The notes beneath the pieces were generated by a model, which saw only the letters and a list, made by a program, of their open reading frames with translations, ran no database searches and was not told the DNA's origin. From Octopus sinensis (Eukaryota), in the NCBI RefSeq assembly GCF_006345805.1, contig NC_042998.1:162192001-162256000 (forward strand): a stretch of DNA of 64,000 bases. Reading direction: 5' to 3'. A program made the translations under genes and the position numbers. Positions 243 through 45,414 of the stretch are shown piece after piece. Numbering within the stretch: the stretch's first letter is position 1; each line of letters opens with the position of its first letter.

Positions 243-394
243 TTAATACTTGGGTTATTCTGTCAAGTGTAATACTTGTTTAATCACATTGGTTTGAATT
301 AATCACAGCTTCAAGATGTTGATAACATTTTAGAATGACATTGTAGAGTAGGTGTTATAGGCTAGATCTGGCCAGTTTGAACCTAAAACATGTA
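243..394 (+). mobile_element. piggyBac-like MITE (family PB1), left part, split by the foldback element
   Basis: Matches the intact copy at 27691-27918 (TTAGAATGACATTGTAG...GATCTGGCCAGTTTGAAC-TAAAACATGTA). The element resumes at 2461. Confidence 0.75.
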
Positions 395-448
395 GGATCC
401 TTTCAATCTCAGTCATAGATTTTTTAATTATTTTTTTTTAACAAAACA

Positions 449-860
449 GCAGGAGTGGCTGTGTGGTAAGTAGCTTGCTTACCAACCACATGGTTCCGGG
501 TTCAGTCCCACTGCATGGCATCTTGGGCAAGTGTCTTCTACTATAGCCACGGGCCGACCAAAGCCTTGTGAGTGGATTTGGTAGACGGAAACTGAAAGAA
601 GCCCGTCGTATATATGTATATATATATATGTGTGTGTGTATGTTTGTGTGTCTGTTTGTTCCCCCAACATCGCTTGTCAACAGATGGTGGTGTGTTTACG
701 TCGTCATCACTTAGCAGTTCAGCAAAAGAGACTGATAGAATAAGTACTAGGCTTACAAAGAATAAATCCCGGGGTCGATTTGCTCGACTAAAGGCGGTGC
801 TCCAGCATGGCCGCAGTTAAATGACTGAAACAAGTAAAAGAGTAAAAGAGTGAAAGAGTA
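449..860 (+). mobile_element. tRNA-derived SINE family A (CORE-like, OR-type), inside left foldback arm
   Basis: A-box TGGCTGTGTGG, B-box GGTTCAGTCC, CORE-like CTTGGGCAAGTG, internal (TA)/(TG)n, (GAGTAAAA)n tail. AAACAG flanks both ends (possible TSD). Confidence 0.9.
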
Positions 861-1060
861 AACAGTTTGAAACTTTGGATACTGGTTGAATGTGTCATAT
901 TAATATTTTTGACAAAATTTTGTATTTTAGAAGTTATTTCGTGTTGAAGTTGTTACTGCTGTTTGCGAAAGTAATGGAAAAGCAACAACTTCCGGGTCAT
1001 TGGGTCATGAAAAAGAGAGAGAGAGAGAGGTGGGAGAAAAGTATAAAAGATAAGAAAGGT

Positions 1061-1130
1061 GGGTGAGAAAAATAGAAAGTTTTTTTATAGGGAATGGGTG
1101 AGAAAAGCAGAAAGTTCTTTTATAGGGAAT
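1061..1130. repeat. 35-bp tandem duplication
   Basis: GGGTGAGAAAAATAGAAAGTTTTTTTATAGGGAAT followed by GGGTGAGAAAAGCAGAAAGTTCTTTTATAGGGAAT. Confidence 0.9.
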
Positions 1131-2033
1131 ACATAATGTGTGTGTGTGCGTGTGTATTTTTCTCCATCTTATCCAATGTGTCCTCTCATTTATATAATGT
1201 TAGCGTGTGACATCGAGAGAGATTTGGCTATTATTTCCAGCAGGTCAAGCAACTATACAGATTCTCACATTTTCTCACACACATACATACATACATGCAT
1301 ACATACATTCATACATACATACATACATGCATGTACATACACACAAATATGTTATAATCATTTTCAGTTAACTCCTTTAGTGATTGCGCCTGATTTTTAT
1401 ATGTGGCAAATCGTAGAGAGAGAGAGAGTGAGAGAGAGGGTGAGAGAGAGAGCGAGGGAGAGAGAGAGTGAGAGAGAGAGGTAGAGAGAGCAGAGGAGAG
1501 AATGGAGAGAGTGGTGGTGTGTTGATGATCTGAACAACTTATGTAAACTTGCCAATCCCCTACCACTGCATATTCATTTATTAAACCCTCTCCTTTTCCT
1601 TGCTCCCATTCGGGGTCTTATAAGCTTTATATATAAATGTGTGTGTGTGTGTGTGTGTGATGGACAGCAGAAACGCTGCATGAACAACTGTCATCAACTT
1701 CACAATCCCCTTCCTCCTTAAAGCTACGTATTCCTCACACCACCTCCCTTTCCTTTCCTCAGCATTCTAAAAGTTGCATGTATATGTATTGGTGTGTGTG
1801 TGTGTGTGTGTGTGTACATATACAAGTGTCTGTATATTTATGCACATATATGTATGCAGCGTCCAAAACAGATGACCCAATGACCCAGATGTTGTTGCTC
1901 TTCCATTATTTTCACAAACAGCAGTAACTTTAATACGAAATAACTTCTAAAATACAAAATTGTGTCAAAAACGTTAAGAGTAAACCGTGTTCTATGTGAC
2001 ACATTCAACCAGTAACCAAAGTTTCAAACTGTT

Positions 2034-2414
2034 TTACTCTTTTACTTGTTTCAGTCATTTGACTGTGGCCATGCTGGAGCACCGCCTTTAGTCAAGCAAA
2101 TCGACCCTGGGACTTATTCTTTGTAAGCCTAGTACTTATTTTATCGGTCTCTTTTGCTGAACCGCTAAGTTACGAGGGCGTAAACATACCAGCATTGGTT
2201 GTCAAGAAATGTTGAGGGGTGGTGGACAAACACAGACACACAAACACACACACATATATGATGGGCTTTTTTCAGTTTCCAACTGCCAAATCCACTCACA
2301 AGGCTTTGTTCGGCCCAAGGCTATAGTAGAAGACACTTGCCCAAGGTGCCACGCAGTGGGACTGAACCCAGAACCATGTGGTTGGTAAGCAAGCTACTTA
2401 CCACACAGCCACTC
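2034..2414 (-). mobile_element. SINE family A, inside right foldback arm
   Basis: Reverse complement of the family A consensus, at the same position in the arm as the 449-860 copy. Confidence 0.9.
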
Positions 2415-2460
2415 AAAAAAAAATTAATTAAAAAATCTGTGACTGAGATTGAAAAGATCC

Positions 2461-2513
2461 AGCAAGTAGAGTGTTTGGTTTGGATATGGCTAGTTTAAAT
2501 GCTAAAAGGTTAA
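2461..2513 (+). mobile_element. piggyBac-like MITE PB1, right end
   Basis: GGATATGGCTAGTTTAAATGCTAAAAGGTTAA matches the right end of the 27691-27918 copy and ends in TTAA. Confidence 0.75.
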
Positions 2514-4505
2514 TATAGTTCTAAGCCAAATCAGCATGGCACAACATGCTCTAAAGACAGACATTTGAATTACTGGTAAAATCTATCCAATGGGCTTCTA
2601 TGCAGTGTCTACCACAGGTTTGGATGTAATCCAAAACTATGATAAAGATATTTGTTCACAGTGCCATATAGCAGGACTAAACACCTGACTTATAAGTGTG
2701 AAGTGAAATTTTTGAGAGAGTAAAGTGGGATAAAGGGCAGATTTAGCTGGTATTTTTAGCAAGTTTAATTACCAGTCTGAGGCTCCTTCAATGGCTTTTG
2801 TAAGCTTCAGTTTGTAATAACAGGACCACCAGAACAAAACAACTTTTATATATTTCATATACATTGTTTCGTAAAGTTAAGAACAAGTGGCCACCCACCT
2901 CATATAGTTTACATTTGCCCTGGAATATTTTTTCGATATCATTCTAAATCATTTGTGGTTCTCTTAAATACTTTTTCAAATATATCTTAGCAGGAGATTA
3001 TTTGGTAATATTTTTACAGTAACTTAAAGTAGTGTCATTTTTTTCTCACATACTTTACTAAGTATAATTTACAACATTTGATCCAAGTTCTGAGAAGCAT
3101 ATGCTAAAATATATTTTCCTTTACATTTTCCCACAATATTTTACGATATCAGATATGATGTAATTTTGAAAGGATATGTACTGTTATTTCCCTATTAGAT
3201 TTCCTATCCACATAAGCTAACCAGATTCAAAACTTGAAATTACATACATTATTGAAAATGACATAGAATTTATTAACTTCATTTATTACGTAGAATGATG
3301 GCATTTAAACTGCTAAACGCCATATCTGTCTAACATATAAATCTAGAGGGAAATTAAGAAGAGAAATAAATTTTGTAAACATAATAGGTTTTGCTAAAAT
3401 GCTATAATGATGATATTGATGTTGATGATTATGATGGTAATAAATAATGATAATGATGAAAATAAAGATGATAATAACAATAACTATTTTCTTTATTAAT
3501 AAAAATAATAATATTAATTATCTTGGCCTCTGATACTTTAGCAACATAAGTTACAGGGGACTAAAATGTATGAACTATTTAATAGGAGTAGTCATAAGAG
3601 ATTTAGTGCAAGACTGACATAGAATAAACATACATGATGTTAAAGATTACATAAGTGCTAAGATGTAGGATCACATTAACCAGATGTGTTATGTGACAAT
3701 TTTACAAAAGAAGTACAATGTAAAACTATTTAAACATTGTTTCTGATAAGACTCCTTGAAATGGTATTGGCAAACAAAGGAAGAATCAGGCATAAATGTT
3801 CACAAAGGATATCAAATTCAGACAAGAAAGCATTAATCTTAAAATCTATGACAAACTTAGAGTTTTAACAGAAGTTTTCAGCCAGTCGTATTCTGCTCTC
3901 TCCTATATTTAGAAGTCCTGAAGCACAATTTATGACCAAATTTCATGCAGAGGAGTAATTTTTTCATGAATTAATTTGAAGAATTACGTGGGAAAAGTAG
4001 AAGATATTGAAGTGATTTCATGGAAAGACCACAAAAAGAACAATAAGTGCACAACCTTGTCAGTTCTTTGTGTCTTGAGTTAAAATGCCTCTAAGGTTAA
4101 TTTTATTTTTCATTCTGATAGGGTTATTAAAATAAAGTGCAAACCAAGTGCTGGAGTTGATATAATTAACTATTTCTTCCCTACAAATATATGGCCTTGT
4201 ATCTCTATTAGAAATGCTTAGGGTTAGGGAATGCAAATCAAAATCTGTTGCAGTGATACAGCTTCTGATAAATATAATATAGTCCGAAACACTTTGGTGT
4301 GACATCTTCTTGTTGTTTAGCTATCTCAGAAACCCTGATTAAGAAATCATATATAATCAAAAAAGATTCTAACCATAAGCATTCTGTCCTTTTTGCATAT
4401 GCATATTTTGGATACTGTCAAAGATATTCTTTCTTTTAAAAAAAAGTAAGGTGTAATTTAATAGATTTGGCTGCTATTTCTAACAGGTTATGTGATTGCA
4501 TAGAA

Positions 4506-9936: not shown

Positions 9937-10350
9937 ATGGCTGTGTGGTAAGTAGCTTGCTTACACACCACAAGGTTCCAGGTTTAGTCCCACTGCGTGG
10001 CACCTTGGGCAAGTGTCTTCTACTATAGCCTCTGGCTGACCAAAGCCTTGTGAGTGGATTTGGTAGATGGAAACTGAAAGAAGCCTGTCGTATATATCTA
10101 TATATATATATATATATGTGTATGTGTGTGTATATGTTTGTGTGTCTGTGTTTGCCCCCCCCCATTTTTTGACAACCAATGCTGGTGTGTTTACGCCCCT
10201 GTAACTTAGTGGTTCAGCAAAAGTGACAGATAGAATAAGTACTAGGCTTATAAAGAATAAGTCCTGGAGTCGATTTGCTCGGCTAAAGGCGGTGCTCCAG
10301 CATGGCTACAGTCAAATGACTGAAACAAGTAAAAGAGTAAAGCGTAAAAG
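9937..10350 (+). mobile_element. SINE family A
   Basis: Full head, internal microsatellite and GTAAAAGAGTAAA tail. Confidence 0.9.
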
Positions 10351-13087: not shown

Positions 13088-13270
13088 TACATATACATAT
13101 ATACGATGGGCTTCTTTCAGTTTCCATCTACCAAATCCACTCACTTGGCTTTGGTCGGCTTGAGGCTATAGTAGAAGACACTTGCCCAAGGTGCCATGCA
13201 GTGGAACTGAACTCGGAACCATGTGGTTGGTAAAACAAGCTACTTACCACACAGTCACTCCTGCACCTAT
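13088..13270 (-). mobile_element. SINE family A, 5' half only
   Basis: Head and CORE-like part ending at the internal microsatellite. An opposite-orientation 3'-half scrap lies at 13052-13078. Confidence 0.85.
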
Positions 13271-13510: not shown

Positions 13511-13738
13511 TACTCTTACTCTTTTACTCTTTTACTTGTTTCAGTTATTTGACTGCAGTAATGCTGGAGCACCGCTTTTAGTCAAGCAAATCGACCCCAT
13601 GACTTATTCTTTGTTAGATTAGTACTTATTCTATCGGATCTCTTTTGCCAAACTGCTAAGTTATGGGGGACGTAAACAGACCAGCACTGGTTCTCAAGCG
13701 ATGTTGAGGTGGGGGGGGGCACAAACCCAGACACACAA

Positions 13739-13771
<33 letters not shown>

Positions 13772-13951
13772 CATATACATATATACAATGGGCTTCTTTC
13801 AGTTTCCGTCAACCAAATCCACTCACAAGGCTTTGGTCGGCCCGAGGCTATAGTAGAAGACACTTGCCCAAGGTGCCATGCAGTGGGACTGAACTTGGAA
13901 CAATGTGGTTGGTAAGCAAGCTACTTACCACACAGCCACTCCTGTGCCTAT
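13511..13951 (-). mobile_element. SINE family A
   Basis: Full-length reverse copy. Confidence 0.9.
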
Positions 13952-15280
13952 TAATAACAAATCTTTATGGAAAACTTTTGTTATATCCCTGCTTGAAATT
14001 TGGTGGGATTGGGTGTGGCAGCACATCCAATACAGCAACCATCACCTGCCACTGGTATCTAGTCTTAAAATACTATCTCTGTAAGTTTTCCTCCATCTTA
14101 TGCCAGCATGGGAAAATAGATGTGAGATGAACATCAACAAAGCAATTATTGCAGGTATAAGACAAATCTGTATTTTCAATCTTATGCAGCATTATAGAGG
14201 GTAAATACAGAAGGTCAGACTATTTATTGCGGTATATCTGTTGTCTTGTGTGAAGACTGTATCATGCATCAAAGACAGAAATCATAGATTTAATGGGGGA
14301 GCTTCGTAACTAAAAATCCATTGTTATGCTAGAAGAAAGCTCACATGACAGCAACAACAATAATAATGCTGCACCCACCACCACCACCAGTAACAACAGC
14401 AATAGCAAAAACAAAAACAATTGCTTTAAAATATTTCTCATTGCATTTTAATCTTTCAACCAGTGACAAGCTAAATACTGCCGCTTCATTGTTGTTAAAA
14501 TCACAAACATCAAAAGAGCACAAGGAAACAAATATTTTGTGAGACTATCAAAATTCAAATTCTACTTTCACACCAACTGAGAATTCATCAAAAATATGAC
14601 ATTTACAGTGCTGGTAGCTTACTATAAAATCCTGTATTGGTCTTTAAGGCATATGACTTTTGTTACATATTGGCAGCAGAAGGAAACTCACAGTGCAATT
14701 GTTGGTGGTTGGTTGCATCAAATTTTCAGTTTCTCTCTCTGATAAATTACATCTCCCTTTTCCTCTTTCTTGTTCTTAGTTCTTTCTATTTCATTCTCAC
14801 ATTCACCATTTTATTTCTCTCTTTCTCTCTCCCTCTCTTGCTCTCCCTTTCTTTACCTCCCCCCCCTCTCTCTCTCTCTCTCTCTCTTATTTCTTTTTAA
14901 AATTTTTCTTTGATTCTTTCAATCTCATCTACTTTTATCTCGGCTCATCCATTTTTCTTTTACCTTTTTAATGGTATGTGTTCCTGCATTTGTATGTGTA
15001 TGAATATTATTGTATGTATCACATATTGCTTTTCTGTCTGTCTGTCTGTCTGTTTCTCATGATTTTTTCCTTCTTTCAATCAGTTTATCATCATCATCAT
15101 CATCCCTTCCACCAACTTAATATTTCCCCCCTTCTTTTTTATCTTCTTCCTCCTCCTCCTCCTTCTCCTTCATTCTCCTTTCTGTCCCACCTCACTCCAA
15201 CAATTACTCAGGACTTTGTGACAGCAGACATTAAGTCTCCATCATTGCTGAATATATTTCAATGATATTAATGAAAAATT

Positions 15281-16728: not shown

Positions 16729-16968
16729 TTCTTTTATTCTTGTTTCATTCATTTCACTGTGGCCTTGCTGGAGCGCTACCTTGAAGAGGTTTAGTCAAAC
16801 AAATCGACACCAGGACTTATTTTTTAAGCCTAGGACATATCCATGAGTCTCTTTTGATGATCTGTTAGTTTAGGGGACATAAACACATCAATACCGGTTG
16901 TCAAGCAGTGAAGAGGGAACAAACATAGATGCAAAGACTCACACATAGATACTTACATATATACATAC

Positions 16969-17028
<60 letters not shown>

Positions 17029-17177
17029 GGTGGGCTTCTTTGAGTTTCCATCTATCAAATCCACTCACAAGGCTTTGGTCAACCAGAGTCTATAGCAGAA
17101 GGTGCCATGCAGTGGGACTGAACCCAGAACCCTGTGGTTGAGAAGAGTAAGCTTCTTACAATACGGTCACACCTGTA
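16729..17177 (-). mobile_element. SINE family A (variant)
   Basis: Reverse copy, head-to-head with 17218-17625. Confidence 0.85.
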
Positions 17178-17217
17178 TACATACATACATACATATATAT
17201 AGATATACATAGTTATA

Positions 17218-17625
17218 TAGGTGCAGGCATGACTGTGTCGTAAGAAGCTTGCTTCTCATCCACATGGTTCTGGGTTCAATCTCACTGCATGGCACCTTCA
17301 ACAAGTGTTTTCTACTATAGCCTTGGGCTGACCAAGTGAGTGGATTTGGTAGATGGAAACTGAAAGAAGACTGTCGTATATCTGTATATATATATGTGTG
17401 CGTGTGTGTGTGAGTGTGTATTTATGTGTATGTCCTTGTGTCTGTCTTTGCCCCCCCCCCCCATCACCACTTGACAACCAGTGTTGGTGTGTTTACATCC
17501 CCATAACTTAGGAGCTCAGCAAAAAGACCAATAAAATAAGTAGCAGGCTTAAAAAGTGAGTCCTGGGGCGGATTTGTTTGACTGAAACTCTTCAAAGTGG
17601 TGCTCCAGTCAAATGAGTAAAAGAA
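17218..17625 (+). mobile_element. SINE family A (variant)
   Basis: TAGGTGCAGGCATGACTGTGTCGTAAG head through GAGTAAAAGAA tail. Confidence 0.85.
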
Positions 17626-17635
17626 TATATATATC

Positions 17636-17681
<46 letters not shown>

Positions 17682-27690: not shown

Positions 27691-27918
27691 TTAACCCTTT
27701 AGCATTCAGGTTAGTATGTCAAATATAATGCTTATTTATTCATGATGTTTCAAATTAGTCAAGCATTATTTCGTAGCTTTGAGATTTTGATGAGGTGATT
27801 GTATATTTTTAAGATGTTATTGTAGAAAAGTTGTGAGAGGCCAGACATGGCCAGTTTGAACATAAAACATGTAGAATATTTGGGCTGGATATGGTCAGTT
27901 TAAATGCCAAAGGTTTAA
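27691..27918 (+). mobile_element. piggyBac-like MITE PB1, intact
   Basis: TTAA-CCCTTTAGCATT ... AATGCCAAAGGT-TTAA, i.e. TIRs plus TTAA TSD. 228 bp inclusive. Confidence 0.8.
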
Positions 27919-29030
27919 TCTTTCAGTAACAATGTGTCAAATTTATAAAAGTATGAAGGATTTTCTATATTAGACAGCTATAATAACATTGCATAACAAA
28001 ATGTTTATATTTTTGTCTTTGGTCAGTAAATGTTATTTCCTGTTTGCTTCTATTTAGAAGTCAAAGGAAATGACTACTATTCCCTTCAAACTCTGCTTTC
28101 ATGACCTGGATATTCAGCGTTTTCAAACTTACCTATATTTTCCATTACATTTCAGACAAATTCAGCACTGAGTTGCTGAAGCAGAAATATCATTATAGCA
28201 AATATTCTGCTCAATATCAGACTTGCATGTTAGTTGCTTGACCTTAACCACTTGAGCATGCTCCTCAGTGGCTAACAATATGTGCATCTCGGAACATAAG
28301 CAGGAGCAGGAGCAGTGGTGTAGCCTCATAGCCATGCATTGAGAGGGATTTTTTGGCATTTGAATAAATGTAACAAAGGCAAAGTTTGAAGGAAATATTA
28401 ACCATTTTCCATACTTTTAAGGGGTGAGCAAATAGGATATAACAGTTGCGACCCAAGGTCAAAAATCGTGTTATGCAGTATAATTGGATGAAGTGTATAT
28501 CTATGTATACCAAGTATTACACTACTGTTATACTTATTTTCATAGATCCTGCAGCCTTTCATAATTTATTGTTGTTGCTATTGGTAATGATAATGATGAT
28601 GACAATGATGGTGATAATGACAGCAACAATGATGATGATGATGATGATATTTAATTTTTCTTTTCTTCCTCATTATGAATATTAATTTCCTATTTTCAGT
28701 CAGACTTTCACTCACCTCATGTTTTCATCTTCTCCCTACCACAAAGTCATTTTATTTATCAATGTTAGAACAACTGCCAAAATATCTTCCAAAGAACTTG
28801 ACCTTAATTAATTATTTGCAATTACTTCTATCGAATATTTATCCAACAAATTATCAGATTGTTATATAGCAATATTTCATAAGGATTATAGTGATTCTAC
28901 CACAGGCCAGTTATCACATATCTGCTGTCATTCCAGAGTAAATATAATGATAGAGAACTACATAGCATTAGAAGAGAATTTTACCATGTTCTTCATCATT
29001 CAATAAAGACCAATTATATATATATATATA

Positions 29031-29444
29031 TAGGCGCAGGAGTGGCTGTGTGGTAAGTAGCTTGCTAACCAACTACATGGTTCCGGGTTCAGTCCCATTA
29101 CGTGGCATCTTGGGCAAGTGTCTTCTGCTATAGCCCCGGGCCGACCAATGCCTTGTGAGTGGATTTGGTAGACGGAAACTGAAAGAAGCCTGTCGTATAT
29201 ATGTATCTATATATATAAGTGTGTGTGTATATGTTTGTGTGTCTGTGTTTGTCCCCCTAGCATTGCTTCACAACCGATGCTGGTGTGTTTACGTCCCCGT
29301 CACTTAGCGGTTCGGCAAAAGAGGCCGATAGAATAAGTACTGGGCTTACAAAGAATAAGCCCCGGGGTCGATTTGCTCGACTAAAGGTGGTGCTCCAGCA
29401 TGGCCGCAGTCAAATGACTGAAACAAGTAAAAGAGTAAAAGAGT
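29031..29444 (+). mobile_element. SINE family A, young-looking copy in (TA)n
   Basis: Full length, many CpGs retained, (TA)n on both sides. Confidence 0.92.
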
Positions 29445-41383: not shown

Positions 41384-41590
41384 TAGGTGCAGGAGTGGCT
41401 GTGTAGGTGCAAGAGTGGCTATGTAGGTGCAGGAGTGGATGTGTGGGAGGAAGTTTGCCTTCCAACCACATAGTTCCAGGTACAGTCCCACTGCGTGGCA
41501 CCTTGGGCAAGTGTCTTCTACTATAGCCTTGGGCTGACCTAAACCTTGTAAGTGGATTTAGTAGATGGAACCTGAAAGAAGCCCATCGTG
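41384..41590 (+). mobile_element. SINE family A 5' half with triplicated 20-bp head
   Basis: TAGGTGCA(G/A)GAGTGG(C/A)T(G/A)TG repeated at 41384, 41404 and 41424. Confidence 0.85.
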
Positions 41591-44142: not shown

Positions 44143-45414
44143 CAAGAGTTGGACAAAACAATAGAAACACCGAGCATAATTGAATCATAATTTTGAAATA
44201 TCTATAAAACCATCAAAAGCCTGTTTATTTTTATGTTTTTTTTATTTATTATTAGTGTTGTTTAATATGTTTTGCTAAAGTTGCTGTTTCTTTTCAGATA
44301 TCCTCAGAAAAAGGTAATTAAAATTCATTAAAATGACAGATCAATCAGAGTTTCAAAGAGGTCAAATTGTTTGTGCTCAAATGGCAGGTGCTAGCATAAT
44401 GAAAACAGCCAAAATGTTTTGTATATCAAGAAGAACTGTCTCGAAAGTAATGACAGCTTTGAGAAAGTGGGAAAAACCTCCTCATCAAAACAAAACTCCA
44501 GAAGAAAACCAAAACTTTCAGATAAGGACTGCTGGACTCTCATGCAAATTGTTAGAAAGGATCACAAAAGTACAGCTCCCAGATTTACTGCAGAGCTTAA
44601 TGACTACCTCAGGAACCCATTTTCCACAAAAATCGTTCACTGGTAGCTGCACAAAGCCGGATTTCATGGGAGGGCTGCAATCAGAAAACAACTACTTTCA
44701 AAAACAAACGTTGCAAAGTGTTTAGAGTTGAGTAAAAACCTACAGAATTGGTCTGCAGAGCAGTGGAAGAATGTTATTTTCTTGGACATGTCATCCTTTA
44801 CTTTATTTCCGACCACTGGCCAAGTATACATGTGGAGACTGCCAAAAGAAGCACTTGATCCAGGCTGCCTTCTTCCAACTGTTAAACATGGGGGAGGATC
44901 TGTGATGATCAGGGGTGGGGGCTATATCTTGGAAATCCGCAGGTCCAATGGTTTCCCTTCATGGCAGAATTAATAGTCAAGACTATTTAAGCATTTTATC
45001 TGATCAAATTCATCCTATGGTTGTGGTAGTGTTTCCAGAGGGAAACACAATCTTTCAGGATGATAATGCAGTAATTCACACAACTAAAGTTGTTACTGAA
45101 TGGCACGAGGCACATTCTGGTGACATTGAACATTTTATCTGGCCAATACAGCCCCCAGATCTCAATATCATCGAACATTTATGGTGCATTTTAGAAAAAC
45201 AAGTAAGGAGTCGATATCCTTCACCATCATCACTACAAGAACTGGAGACTGTTTTAGCTGAAGAATGGACAAAAATTCCTTTGGAAACAAACTTTGTATG
45301 AGTCCATACTTTGTAGAATTCAAGCTGTGATTACTGCCAAAGGCAGCCCTACCCCATATTAAAATAAATTTGTTTGAAATTTTAAGGTGTTTCCATTATT
45401 TTGTCCAACCCCTG
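44143..45414 (+). mobile_element. Full-length Tc1/mariner transposon, DD36E (Incomer-like), inactive
   Basis: 29-bp TIRs CAAGAGTTGGACAAAACAATAGAAACACC / rc CAGGGGTTGGACAAAATAATGGAAACACC. CA on each side is consistent with a mutated TA TSD. 1272 bp. Confidence 0.92.
44333..45362 (+). pseudogene. Tc1-family DDE transposase pseudogene
   Basis: HTH N-terminus (QRGQIV...SRRTVSKV), WKNVIFLD (D at 44785), TVKHGGGSVM, FQDDNA (D at 45062), PPDLNIIEHLW (E at 45173): 36 residues between D and E. About 3 frameshifts and a TAG at 44644. Confidence 0.92.

What the first reader, a model, noticed from the sequence alone, without database searches (positions are those of the whole stretch)
395..2460. Foldback element with the same SINE sitting at the same site in both inverted arms
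Seen: two ~600-bp inverted arms (395-1008, 1872-2460). Each is ~45 bp of outer terminus, a family A SINE, then ~150-160 bp of inner arm. The non-SINE parts on both sides of the SINE are clearly homologous between the arms. The unit splits a piggyBac-like MITE and has an imperfect 8-bp duplication (AACATGTA/AGCAAGTA). Inference: the SINE inserted once into a ~200-bp TIR (AAACAG flanks it) and was copied to the other arm by arm-to-arm conversion or foldback repair. The alternative is two independent insertions at one preferred site. GG termini with an 8-bp TSD fit Merlin or Mutator/foldback types better than hAT (CA termini). If the element was mobile, it would spread SINEs as ready-made dsRNA hairpins.
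Basis: partly seen in the sequence, partly recalled or inferred. Interest (0 to 1): 0.7.

Follow-up and report, generated by a model that had tools for sequence, protein, structure and literature searches.

The report
Long-armed DNA transposon carrying paired SINEs
A 2.07-kb non-coding cut-and-paste transposon has two roughly 600-bp inverted arms that each hold the same SINE, most likely because one arm was copied from the other; this is an ordinary case of nested transposons with an unusual layout.

Summary
Window 395-2460 is a 2066-bp unit with inverted arms of 614 and 589 bp and an 863-bp microsatellite-rich loop. Each arm consists of an outer terminus, a SINE with its 5' end outward, and an inner segment.

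A second copy of the interrupted 113-bp repeat lies at 27807-27919. It acts as an empty site. With 395-2468 removed, the flanks align to it without gaps, so the 8-bp duplication is real and the unit arrived by insertion.

GG termini plus an 8-bp duplication match the published non-protein hallmarks of Merlin transposons. No transposase is present, and no related copy could be reached.

The arms differ equally inside the SINE (8.9%) and outside it (7.9%), and the SINE 3' junction is the same in both arms. This favours one SINE insertion followed by arm-to-arm copying.

Three corrections apply. The 5' junctions differ, because the right arm lacks 13 bp that include the upstream AAACAG. The two SINEs are not sister copies in the window's tree, which is star-like with one exclusive shared change. 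The host repeat has no inverted termini, so calling it a piggyBac-type MITE is unsupported.

Whether a mobile family exists could not be tested, because no collection available here holds this genome. Interest is modest.

The parts
328..386 (+). Left part of the interrupted 113-bp dispersed repeat (the host of the insertion), up to the duplicated 8 bp
   Evidence: Window 328-394 aligns to 27807-27873 at 80.6%. TTAG at 330-333.
387..394 (.). Left copy of the 8-bp target-site duplication, AACATGTA (contains the palindrome ACATGT)
   Evidence: The sequence occurs once, at 27866-27873, in the empty paralogue.
395..443 (+). Left arm, outer segment. The terminus is GGATCCTTTCAATCTCAGTCA. The segment runs through a T9 run (431-439) to AACA (440-443).
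   Evidence: 93% identical to the reverse complement of 2415-2460. The terminal 21-mer is found only at the two ends.
444..449 (+). AAACAG, upstream copy of the SINE's own 6-bp target duplication. It is present only in the left arm.
   Evidence: Direct reading. Absent from the right arm.
450..859 (+). Left-arm SINE with its 5' end outward. It lacks about 7 nt of the family's 5' end. It has box A-like TGGCTGTGTGG at 456, box B-like GGTTCAGTCCC at 499, an internal (TA)n(TG)n at 606-660, and a tail (AGTAAAAG)n at 833-859.
   Evidence: At least 14 other copies in the window. The 5' end is defined by the multiple alignment. The tail is reported by TRF.
860..865 (+). AAACAG, downstream copy of the SINE target duplication
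   Evidence: The same hexamer follows the right-arm SINE.
866..1008 (+). Left arm, inner segment. It ends in the 8-bp doublet GGTCATTGGGTCAT.
   Evidence: 91.8% identical to the reverse complement of 1872-2028, with indels of 17 and 3 bp. No other copy in the window.
1009..1871 (.). Loop of 863 bp. It is non-coding and rich in (GA)n, (CATA)n and (GT)n. It contains a 35-bp unit twice (1060-1130) and a roughly 130-bp unit twice (1531-1659 and 1681-1812, 68% identical).
   Evidence: TRF, the unit alignment, ORFs that are only low-complexity, and Rfam hits that are only microsatellite look-alikes below threshold.
1872..2028 (-). Right arm, inner segment
2029..2034 (-). AAACAG on the minus strand, placed between SINE tail and inner arm as in the left arm
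2035..2414 (-). Right-arm SINE with its 5' end outward. It starts at GAGTGGCTG directly after the T9 run. Its tail is shorter by 15 nt and its internal microsatellite by 12 nt.
2415..2460 (-). Right arm, outer segment, with terminus GGATCTTTTCAATCTCAGTCA
2461..2468 (.). Right copy of the 8-bp target duplication, AGCAAGTA (6 of 8 identical to the left copy)
   Evidence: Aligns to AACATGTA of the paralogue.
2469..2514 (+). Right half of the interrupted 113-bp repeat
   Evidence: TTAA at 2510-2513.
27807..27919 (+). Uninterrupted paralogue of the host repeat. It serves as the empty site.
   Evidence: It has no inverted termini and two internal direct units of about 45 bp.

Best explanation
Window 395-2460 is one copy of a non-autonomous cut-and-paste DNA transposon with long inverted arms, of the foldback-like or '2-TIR' type.

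**Shown**
- It was inserted into a copy of a 113-bp dispersed repeat with an 8-bp staggered cut.
- Its ends are inverted repeats that begin with GG.
- It has no coding capacity.
- Its arms are homologous over their whole length, including a SINE of about 400 bp.

**Inferred**
- Before the SINE arrived, each arm was about 200 bp.
- One SINE retrotransposed into the arm sequence at ...T9AACA|AAACAG|TTTGAAAC..., duplicating AAACAG.
- Within about 1% divergence of that event, the whole arm including the SINE became present at both ends. This happened either because the second arm was made as an inverted copy of the first, or because one arm was converted by the other.
- The arms then diverged by 8-9%. 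They also acquired indels. One is a 13-bp deletion that removed the upstream AAACAG and the first 3 nt of the SINE in the right arm.
- GG termini plus an 8-bp duplication point to mobilisation by a Merlin-type transposase supplied in trans.

**Open**
- It is not known whether the two-SINE form is what transposed here, or whether the arms were equalised at this locus after insertion.
- A transcript through the unit would fold into a hairpin of about 600 bp. That is a prediction, not an observed function.
For: - **Insertion and target duplication.** Flanks 328-394 and 2463-2514 overlap by 8 bp on the paralogue 27807-27919. The joined flanks align without gaps over 113 bp.
- **Termini.** GGATCC.../GGATCT... 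is found only at the two ends.
- **Arm homology outside the SINE.** The outer segment has 3 differences in 45 positions. The inner segment has 12 in 146. Neither has another copy in the window.
- **Equal divergence.** Non-SINE 15/191 (7.9%) against SINE 30/337 (8.9%), Fisher p = 0.75. Outside CpG sites the values are 5.8% and 5.0%.
- **Same 3' junction and orientation.** Both arms read tail, then AAACAG, then TTTGAAAC.
- **The SINE was unworn when the arms split.** The left copy has 13 private changes and the right copy 17, out of 347 sites against the window consensus. Together these account for the arm-to-arm SINE difference. Only one change is shared exclusively (704 T).
- **The target is not a usual one.** Other copies in the window mostly sit in or beside (TA)n, so AAACAG is not a typical target.
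- **No coding capacity**.
- **Merlin hallmarks.** GG termini, 8-9-bp duplications and TIRs of 24-462 bp are given in PMC8101967, which also reports many Merlin sequences in Octopus bimaculoides.
- **Hairpin.** The RNA minimum free energy is -1132 kcal/mol against about -540 for shuffles. 535 of 614 left-arm bases pair with the right arm.
Against: - Only one copy is known, and no relative with zero, one or two SINE-bearing arms could be examined.
- The two SINEs are not sisters in the window's neighbour-joining tree. The left copy is marginally closer to the copy at 29036 (8.3%) than to the right-arm copy (9.2%).
- Five non-CpG differences between the arms are states shared with other young copies: 521 and 708 with the copy at 29036, 672 and 701 with the copy at 9938, and 664 with the copy at 13944. 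My rough estimate is that about 1.5 would be expected by chance. This hints at different source copies.
- The arms differ in 5' junction, tail length and internal microsatellite length. These are exactly the features that vary between independent SINE insertions.
- The target duplication has 2 mismatches in 8, which is somewhat more than the arm divergence predicts.
- Superfamily assignment rests on two nucleotides and a duplication length.
Confidence: 0.6

Rival explanations
1. Two independent retrotranspositions of the same young SINE subfamily hit the same site, in the same orientation relative to the arm, in both arms of an existing long-TIR element. The left insertion made a 6-bp duplication. 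The right insertion was more 5'-truncated and came with a 3-bp target deletion instead of a duplication.
For: - The right arm reads T9|GAGTGGC...tail|AAAACAG|TTTGAAAC. This is what an insertion with a small target deletion (AAC lost) would give.
- Tail length, internal microsatellite length and 5' truncation all differ between the arms.
- The two copies are not sisters in the tree, and they share states with different other copies.
- They share only one exclusive change.
Against: - The first-strand nick would have to fall at the same nucleotide, give or take one, in both arms.
- There are five other young copies in 64 kb. From that density, the chance of a second hit at that position and orientation is about 1e-4 without a hotspot (my inference).
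- AAACAG is unlike the (TA)n-type targets of the other copies.
- SINE and non-SINE divergence are equal, which this model leaves as a coincidence.
- This model also needs loss of target sequence at the right 5' junction.
Confidence: 0.1
2. The paired arms were built only at this locus. A simpler element with short inverted termini, or with a SINE in one arm only, inserted here. The long arms arose afterwards at this site by arm-to-arm conversion or local inverted duplication. In that case the two-SINE form was never mobile and no family of it exists.
For: - No other copy of the arm sequences in the window or in any reachable collection.
- The target duplication has 2 mismatches in 8. This suggests the insertion is at least as old as the arm split.
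Against: - A family of even 1000 copies in a genome of a few gigabases would rarely show a second copy in 64 kb, so absence from the window says nothing.
- The reachable collections do not contain this genome at all. Its very abundant SINE is absent from them.
- This is a variant of the best explanation rather than a contradiction of it.
Confidence: 0.2
3. It is not a transposon. The unit is a templated or fold-back repair product, or an assembly artefact, and the duplicated 8 bp are a coincidence.
For: - No transposase is present, no second copy is known, and the duplication is imperfect (6 of 8).
Against: - Removing the unit and one 8-bp copy restores a gap-free match to the paralogue.
- The ends are precise inverted repeats that begin right at the duplication.
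- The arms differ by 8-9% with several indels, and the loop is asymmetric. That is unlike the near-perfect palindromes produced by sequencing or assembly chimeras.
Confidence: 0.05

Closest known systems
Non-autonomous Merlin-superfamily DNA transposons (Feschotte 2004, as summarised in PMC8101967)
   Same: - Terminal 5'-GG on both inverted repeats.
- 8-bp target duplication.
- TIRs can be long (24-462 bp). The arm without the SINE is about 200 bp.
- Merlin transposase sequences are reported as abundant in Octopus bimaculoides, and recently active Merlin families are listed for O. vulgaris.
   Different: - There is no DDE_Tnp_IS1595 coding sequence here.
- No TIR match to an autonomous Merlin could be sought.
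- With the SINE included, the arms (589 and 614 bp) exceed the published TIR range.
- That the window comes from an octopus rests on my recollection of the SINE and on one weak protein hit. It is not verified.
Galileo '2-TIR' elements of Drosophila (P superfamily, foldback-like; PMC3573991)
   Same: - Non-coding elements of 1.7-2.2 kb made mostly of long inverted arms.
- The arms grow by recruiting adjacent internal sequence that is 'duplicated and inverted' into the other arm.
- The arms within one copy are about 95% identical.
   Different: - Galileo makes 7-bp duplications, and its arm growth involves its own internal sequence and tandem repeats.
- Here the duplication is 8 bp, the termini begin with GG (I recall Galileo's as different; not checked), and the recruited sequence is a foreign retroposon.
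Drosophila Foldback (FB) and other foldback elements (Tetris, PMC4079207; Tm1, PMC3169594)
   Same: - Long inverted arms make up most of the element (58% here).
- No coding capacity.
- Strong hairpin potential.
   Different: - From my own knowledge, FB-type arms are built of tandem subrepeats and FB/Mutator-type elements make duplications of about 9-10 bp.
- Here the arms have no tandem substructure apart from the SINE's own microsatellite and tail, and the duplication is 8 bp.
Ordinary inverted SINE pairs in transcribed regions, such as inverted Alu pairs that act as double-stranded RNA and RNA-editing substrates
   Same: - Two copies of one SINE family in inverted orientation within 2 kb, able to pair in a read-through transcript.
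- The window has another such pair at 16730-17650.
   Different: - Ordinary pairs arise from independent insertions, have unrelated flanks, and cannot move as a unit.
- Here the flanks on both sides are homologous, and the pair sits inside one transposon with a target duplication.

Membership tests
Merlin superfamily (non-autonomous member) | 8- or 9-bp target-site duplication | tested here: met
   AACATGTA/AGCAAGTA. The 8-bp overlap of the flanks on the empty paralogue is shown. The criterion is from PMC8101967.
Merlin superfamily (non-autonomous member) | Conserved terminal 5'-GG-3' on both TIRs | tested here: met
   GGATCC... at 395 and GGATCT... at 2460 on the minus strand.
Merlin superfamily (non-autonomous member) | TIR length 24-462 bp | tested here: inconclusive
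   The arms are 614 and 589 bp with the SINE and about 200 bp without it.
Merlin superfamily (non-autonomous member) | Encodes a DDE_Tnp_IS1595 transposase, or shares TIR sequence with an element in the same genome that does | not testable with these tools
   This copy has only low-complexity ORFs. The host genome is absent from every DNA and protein collection reachable here.
hAT superfamily | 8-bp target-site duplication | tested here: met
hAT superfamily | Short TIRs beginning with CA or TA (YARNG). This criterion is from my own knowledge. | tested here: not met
   Both termini begin GGATC.
Foldback (FB) / Mutator-type foldback elements | Long inverted arms that make up most of a non-coding element | tested here: met
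   1203 of 2066 bp are arms.
Foldback (FB) / Mutator-type foldback elements | Arms built of tandem subrepeats. This criterion is from my own knowledge. | tested here: not met
   In the arms, TRF finds only the SINE's internal microsatellite, its 8-bp tail repeat and one 8-bp doublet.
Foldback (FB) / Mutator-type foldback elements | Target duplication of about 9-10 bp. This criterion is from my own knowledge. | tested here: not met
   The duplication is 8 bp. A 9-bp reading would make the termini asymmetric.
P superfamily / Galileo-type 2-TIR element | 7-bp target duplication (Galileo; PMC3573991) | tested here: not met
   8 bp here.
tRNA-derived SINE (the repeat inside each arm) | Many dispersed copies with defined ends and a 3' tail of short repeats | tested here: met
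   At least 14 further copies, a common 5' end ..AT|AGGYRCAGGAGTGG, and an (AGTAAAAG)n tail.
tRNA-derived SINE (the repeat inside each arm) | tRNA-like head with polymerase III A and B boxes | tested here: inconclusive
   Box-like motifs TGGCTGTGTGG (456) and GGTTCAGTCCC (499) lie 43 nt apart. ARAGORN finds no tRNA, and Rfam gives no tRNA match even at E <= 1.
tRNA-derived SINE (the repeat inside each arm) | Flanking target-site duplication | tested here: inconclusive
   The left copy is flanked by AAACAG at 444-449 and 860-865. The right copy has only the 3' hexamer.
piggyBac-type MITE (the interrupted host repeat) | TTAA at both ends | tested here: inconclusive
   The paralogue has TTAA at 27809-27812 and 27915-27918. 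The filled copy has TTAG at 330-333 and TTAA at 2510-2513. Only two copies are available.
piggyBac-type MITE (the interrupted host repeat) | Terminal inverted repeats | tested here: not met
   No inverted repeats in 27790-27935. The repeat instead has two direct units of about 45 bp.

The most novel reading that the evidence does not exclude
A still-recognisable family of Merlin-type foldback transposons carries an inverted pair of the genome's dominant SINE inside its arms and has moved in that form. Wherever it landed in a transcribed region, it would deliver a ready-made double-stranded RNA hairpin of about 600 bp. Such a hairpin could be a substrate for RNA editing or small-RNA pathways, and the element would couple a retroposon to a cut-and-paste vehicle.
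Probability: 0.12. Interest if true: 0.55.

Novelty: new member of a known kind. Interest (0 to 1): 0.3.

Why it matters
- It is a clean, datable example of how the arms of a long-TIR transposon grow. A foreign retroposon that lands in one arm ends up in both. This is the same kind of arm dynamics described for Galileo, but with a SINE as the recruited sequence.
- If other copies exist, the family would show that a DNA transposon can carry SINE pairs around as hairpin-forming cassettes. That would be relevant in a genome where SINEs are reported to make up about a tenth of the DNA (O. vulgaris), if this window is indeed from an octopus, and where I recall RNA editing of double-stranded transcripts being prominent.
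- If this is a single copy, it is an ordinary nested-repeat curiosity.
- For annotation, such units are easily mis-split into two SINEs plus 'unknown' fragments.

Tried and rejected
**Searches for other copies outside the window**
- A scan of metagenome contigs with the terminal 21-mer gave three hits. All were chance matches in bacterial contigs of 42-57% G+C, with no similarity beyond 21-29 bases.
- A scan of viral contigs with an inner-arm 22-mer found nothing.

**Searches through spurious ORFs**
- I searched the large protein collection with ORFs that cross the inner arm (alignment A1) and the junction of SINE 3' end and inner arm (alignment A3). Neither gave a hit.
- Because even the SINE-derived part found nothing, this genome's ORFs are not in that collection. 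A first attempt failed because the query was under 40 residues.

**Host identification**
- An exact look-up of a window ORF was not on record.
- A homology search with the Tc1-like pseudogene gave mostly unnamed hits at 43% identity. One partial UniRef hit was from Octopus bimaculoides (74% over 26% of the query). This is suggestive only.
- The two longest source contigs fetched (L004, L005) contain no copy of the SINE, so they come from other organisms.
- The SINE core 24-mer is absent from the bacterial/archaeal genome collection and from the viral contigs.
- A literal search for SINE sequence strings in papers found nothing.

**Other checks**
- Rfam and ARAGORN gave no tRNA or other RNA family for the SINE. 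The only matches were microsatellite look-alikes below threshold.
- A possible related terminus at 14912-14927 is a chance match in CT-rich low-complexity sequence.
- I asked whether each arm is itself a small complete element, which would make this a composite transposon. The arm's outer and inner ends show no inverted similarity, so I rejected this.
- The head-to-head SINE pair at 16730-17650 is only about 80% complementary and I saw no homology in its flanks, so it is not a second example.
- The bacterial promoter and terminator scan is irrelevant here and showed no enrichment.
- A literature search for a SINE present in both TIRs of a DNA transposon found no precedent. The search was limited.
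Full report
**1. What is there**

Window 395-2460 (2066 bp) consists of a left arm (395-1008, 614 bp), a loop (1009-1871, 863 bp) and a right arm (1872-2460, 589 bp). The repeat finder reports six collinear inverted pairs that together cover 388-1008 against 1872-2467 at 86-95% complementarity. A global alignment of the left arm with the reverse complement of the right arm shows the same order of parts in both.

| Part | Left arm | Right arm (minus strand) |
|---|---|---|
| Outer segment | 395-443, then AAACAG at 444-449 | 2415-2460 |
| SINE, 5' end outward | 450-859 | 2035-2414 |
| Hexamer AAACAG after the SINE | 860-865 | 2029-2034 |
| Inner segment | 866-1008 | 1872-2028 |

The coordinates were checked base by base.

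**2. Is it more than chance?**

The SINE is abundant, with at least 14 further copies in the 64-kb window. Two SINEs in inverted orientation within 2 kb would therefore not be remarkable. Another such pair lies at 16730-17650 and is only about 80% complementary.

What is special is the sequence on both sides of the SINE. The outer and inner segments match each other between the arms and match nothing else in the window. The terminal 21-mer occurs only at the two ends, against 0.03 expected.

**3. It is an insertion with an 8-bp target duplication**

The flanks belong to a short dispersed repeat that has an uninterrupted second copy in the window. Flank 328-394 matches 27807-27873, and flank 2463-2514 matches 27868-27919. 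The two flanks therefore overlap by 8 bp on the paralogue.

After removal of 395-2468, the joined flanks align to 27807-27919 over 113 bp without a gap, at 80.5% identity. AACATGTA occurs once in the paralogue, at 27866-27873. In the filled site it appears as AACATGTA on the left and AGCAAGTA on the right. The target contains the palindrome ACATGT.

The unit has inverted termini that start exactly at the duplication. It therefore behaves as a cut-and-paste DNA transposon. It has no coding capacity: its ORFs are translations of microsatellites and SINE sequence, and the loop is made of (GA)n, (CATA)n and (GT)n plus two short duplicated units.

**4. The host repeat**

Similarity between its two copies ends at TTAA on both sides of the paralogue, and at TTAG and TTAA in the filled copy. 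However, the repeat has no inverted termini at all. It consists of two direct units of about 45 bp. The label is unverified.

**5. The SINE and its junctions**

The multiple alignment of window copies puts the family's 5' end at ..AT|AGGYRCAGGAGTGGCTGTGTGG. The structure continues with:
- box A-like and box B-like motifs at 456 and 499;
- an internal (TA)n(TG)n microsatellite;
- a 3' region;
- an (AGTAAAAG)n tail.

ARAGORN and Rfam do not recognise a tRNA in it, so 'tRNA-derived' rests on the motifs only.

In the left arm the SINE starts at CAGGAGTGG, about 7 nt short of the family's 5' end. It is flanked by AAACAG on both sides. I estimate the chance of such a 6-mer match at these positions in this base composition at below 1%.

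In the right arm the 3' junction is the same (tail, AAACAG, TTTGAAAC). The 5' junction is not. The SINE starts at GAGTGG directly after the T9 run, and the 13 bp AACAAAACAGCAG of the left arm are absent. The right-arm copy also has a tail shorter by 15 nt and an internal microsatellite shorter by 12 nt.

'Same SINE at the same site' is therefore shown for the 3' junction and the orientation only.

**6. One insertion or two?**

Evidence that favours one insertion:
- **Divergence.** The outer segment differs at 3/45 positions, the SINE 5' part at 10/152, the SINE 3' part at 20/185 and the inner segment at 12/146. Pooled, non-SINE is 7.9% and SINE is 8.9% (Fisher p = 0.75). Outside CpG sites the values are 5.8% and 5.0%. 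All parts of the arm look equally old.
- **Private changes.** Against the window consensus, the left copy has 13 private changes and the right copy 17, out of 347 sites. Their sum equals the arm-to-arm SINE difference. Only one change (T at 704) is shared exclusively. If there was a single insertion, the arms split while the SINE was still essentially unworn. My estimate is that 0-1 shared changes in 347 sites corresponds to under about 1.4% divergence.
- **Same nick site.** Independent insertions would have to use the same nick site, give or take 1 nt, in the same orientation. Five other young copies lie in 64 kb. At that density I estimate the chance at about 1e-4 without a hotspot.
- **Unusual target.** The other copies mostly lie in (TA)n-like targets, not in anything like AAACAG.
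- **Common indels.** Large indels are frequent in these arms; there is a 17-bp and a 3-bp indel in the 150-bp inner segment. A later 13-bp deletion is therefore unremarkable.

Evidence that does not favour one insertion:
- **Tree.** The neighbour-joining tree places both arm copies in the young clade with the copies at 29036, 13944 and 9938. It does not make them sisters. The left copy is 8.3% from the copy at 29036 and 9.2% from the right-arm copy.
- **Shared states.** Several arm-to-arm differences are states shared with other copies: 521 and 708 with the copy at 29036; 672 and 701 with the copy at 9938; 515, 706 and 716 (all CpG sites) with the copy at 13944. With five young copies this cannot be told apart from homoplasy. 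It does mean that the tree gives no positive support for a single origin.

Weighing these points, I put a single insertion followed by arm copying well ahead of independent insertions (about 0.1). It is not proven.

**7. How the SINE came to be in both arms**

Two routes fit the data, and one copy cannot separate them:
- The second arm was created as an inverted copy of a SINE-bearing first arm.
- A SINE landed in one arm of an existing element, and that arm converted the other.

Growth of arms by sequence that is 'duplicated and inverted' into the other arm is documented for Galileo 2-TIR elements of similar size (PMC3573991).

It is also open whether the two-SINE form is what inserted here. 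The target duplication has 2 mismatches in 8. At 8.5% divergence I calculate P(2 or more mismatches) at about 0.15. This mildly suggests that the insertion is at least as old as the arm split.

**8. Which transposon superfamily?**

Merlin elements are described as having TIRs of 24-462 bp 'with conserved terminal 5'-GG-3'' and 8- or 9-bp duplications (PMC8101967). Both hallmarks are met here, and the SINE-free arm of about 200 bp is within the published range.

The same paper reports 191 Merlin sequences in Octopus bimaculoides. A 2026 repeat annotation lists recently active Merlin, hAT and Mutator families in O. vulgaris. It reports SINEs at 11.6% of that genome, and bursts of TIR elements and SINEs at Jukes-Cantor distances of 0.09 and 0.065 (PMC13282606).

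The other candidates fit less well:
- hAT-type termini are not met.
- Foldback/Mutator-type arms of tandem subrepeats with duplications of about 9-10 bp are not met.
- Galileo's 7-bp duplication is not met.

Membership in Merlin cannot be completed without a transposase-bearing relative.

That the window comes from an octopus is my recollection of this SINE. It is supported only by one partial protein hit and is not verified.

**9. Hairpin potential**

Folded as RNA, the unit has a minimum free energy of -1132 kcal/mol, against about -540 for shuffled sequence. 535 of 614 left-arm bases pair with the right arm. Both SINEs point inward, so their own polymerase III transcripts would be of the same sense. 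Double-stranded RNA would need a read-through transcript.

**10. What could not be done**

The decisive test is to count genomic copies with zero, one or two SINE-bearing arms. It was out of reach. The terminus, the inner arm, ORFs crossing the arms and even the SINE core are absent from every collection available here. Contigs fetched through protein hits belong to other organisms.

**11. Verdict**

The structure is real and correctly described in outline. It is most likely a non-autonomous, Merlin-like long-TIR transposon whose arms were copied from one another after a single SINE insertion. It is a nice but not surprising example of nested repeats. Its interest would rise only if a mobile family carrying the SINE pair is found.

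Noticed in passing
window 44333-45301 (+): Decayed Tc1/mariner-type transposase gene in a single frame with four in-frame stops. Pfam gives DDE_3 at 1.3e-10 and a weak helix-turn-helix match. The best full-length relatives are 43% identical and unnamed. One partial hit is from Octopus bimaculoides in UniRef.
   Followed up: partly
window 16730-17176 (-) and 17223-17650 (+): Two older copies of the same SINE family lie head to head, separated by 46 bp of TA/CATA repeat. They are only about 80% complementary. This looks like an ordinary inverted SINE pair, not a second foldback unit; I did not test its flanks separately.
   Followed up: yes
window 41389-41445: One SINE copy carries its first 20 nt or so (TAGGTGCAGGAGTGGCTGTG) three times in tandem at its 5' end.
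   Followed up: no
window 13108-13264 (-) and 13511-13945 (-): A SINE copy that has only the 5' half lies about 250 bp from a full copy in the same orientation.
   Followed up: no
window 27807-27919; also 328-394 plus 2469-2514: A 113-bp dispersed repeat is bounded by TTAA (TTAG at one end of one copy). It is made of two direct units of about 45 bp and has no inverted termini. Its nature is unknown.
   Followed up: partly
SINE copies across the window, e.g. 29036, 16254, 43978, 17175 and 17223: Most SINE copies sit in or beside (TA)n tracts, and nearly all full-length copies are preceded by ..AT. This suggests either a TA-rich target preference or two more bases belonging to the SINE's 5' end.
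   Followed up: no
window 515-560 (and all other SINE copies): The SINE's central CCTTGGGCAAGT...GCCTCGG stretch recalls the CORE domain of MIR and OR1-type CORE-SINEs. This is from memory only and was not tested.
   Followed up: no
window 1531-1659 and 1681-1812; also 1060-1130: The loop of the element holds a tandem pair of units of about 130 bp, 68% identical, each ending in (GT)n. It also holds a 35-bp unit twice at 91% identity.
   Followed up: partly
window 1865-1871: AAAACAG, the SINE's target motif, also occurs right at the boundary between loop and right arm. About 0.4 such matches are expected by chance in 2 kb, so it is probably meaningless.
   Followed up: no
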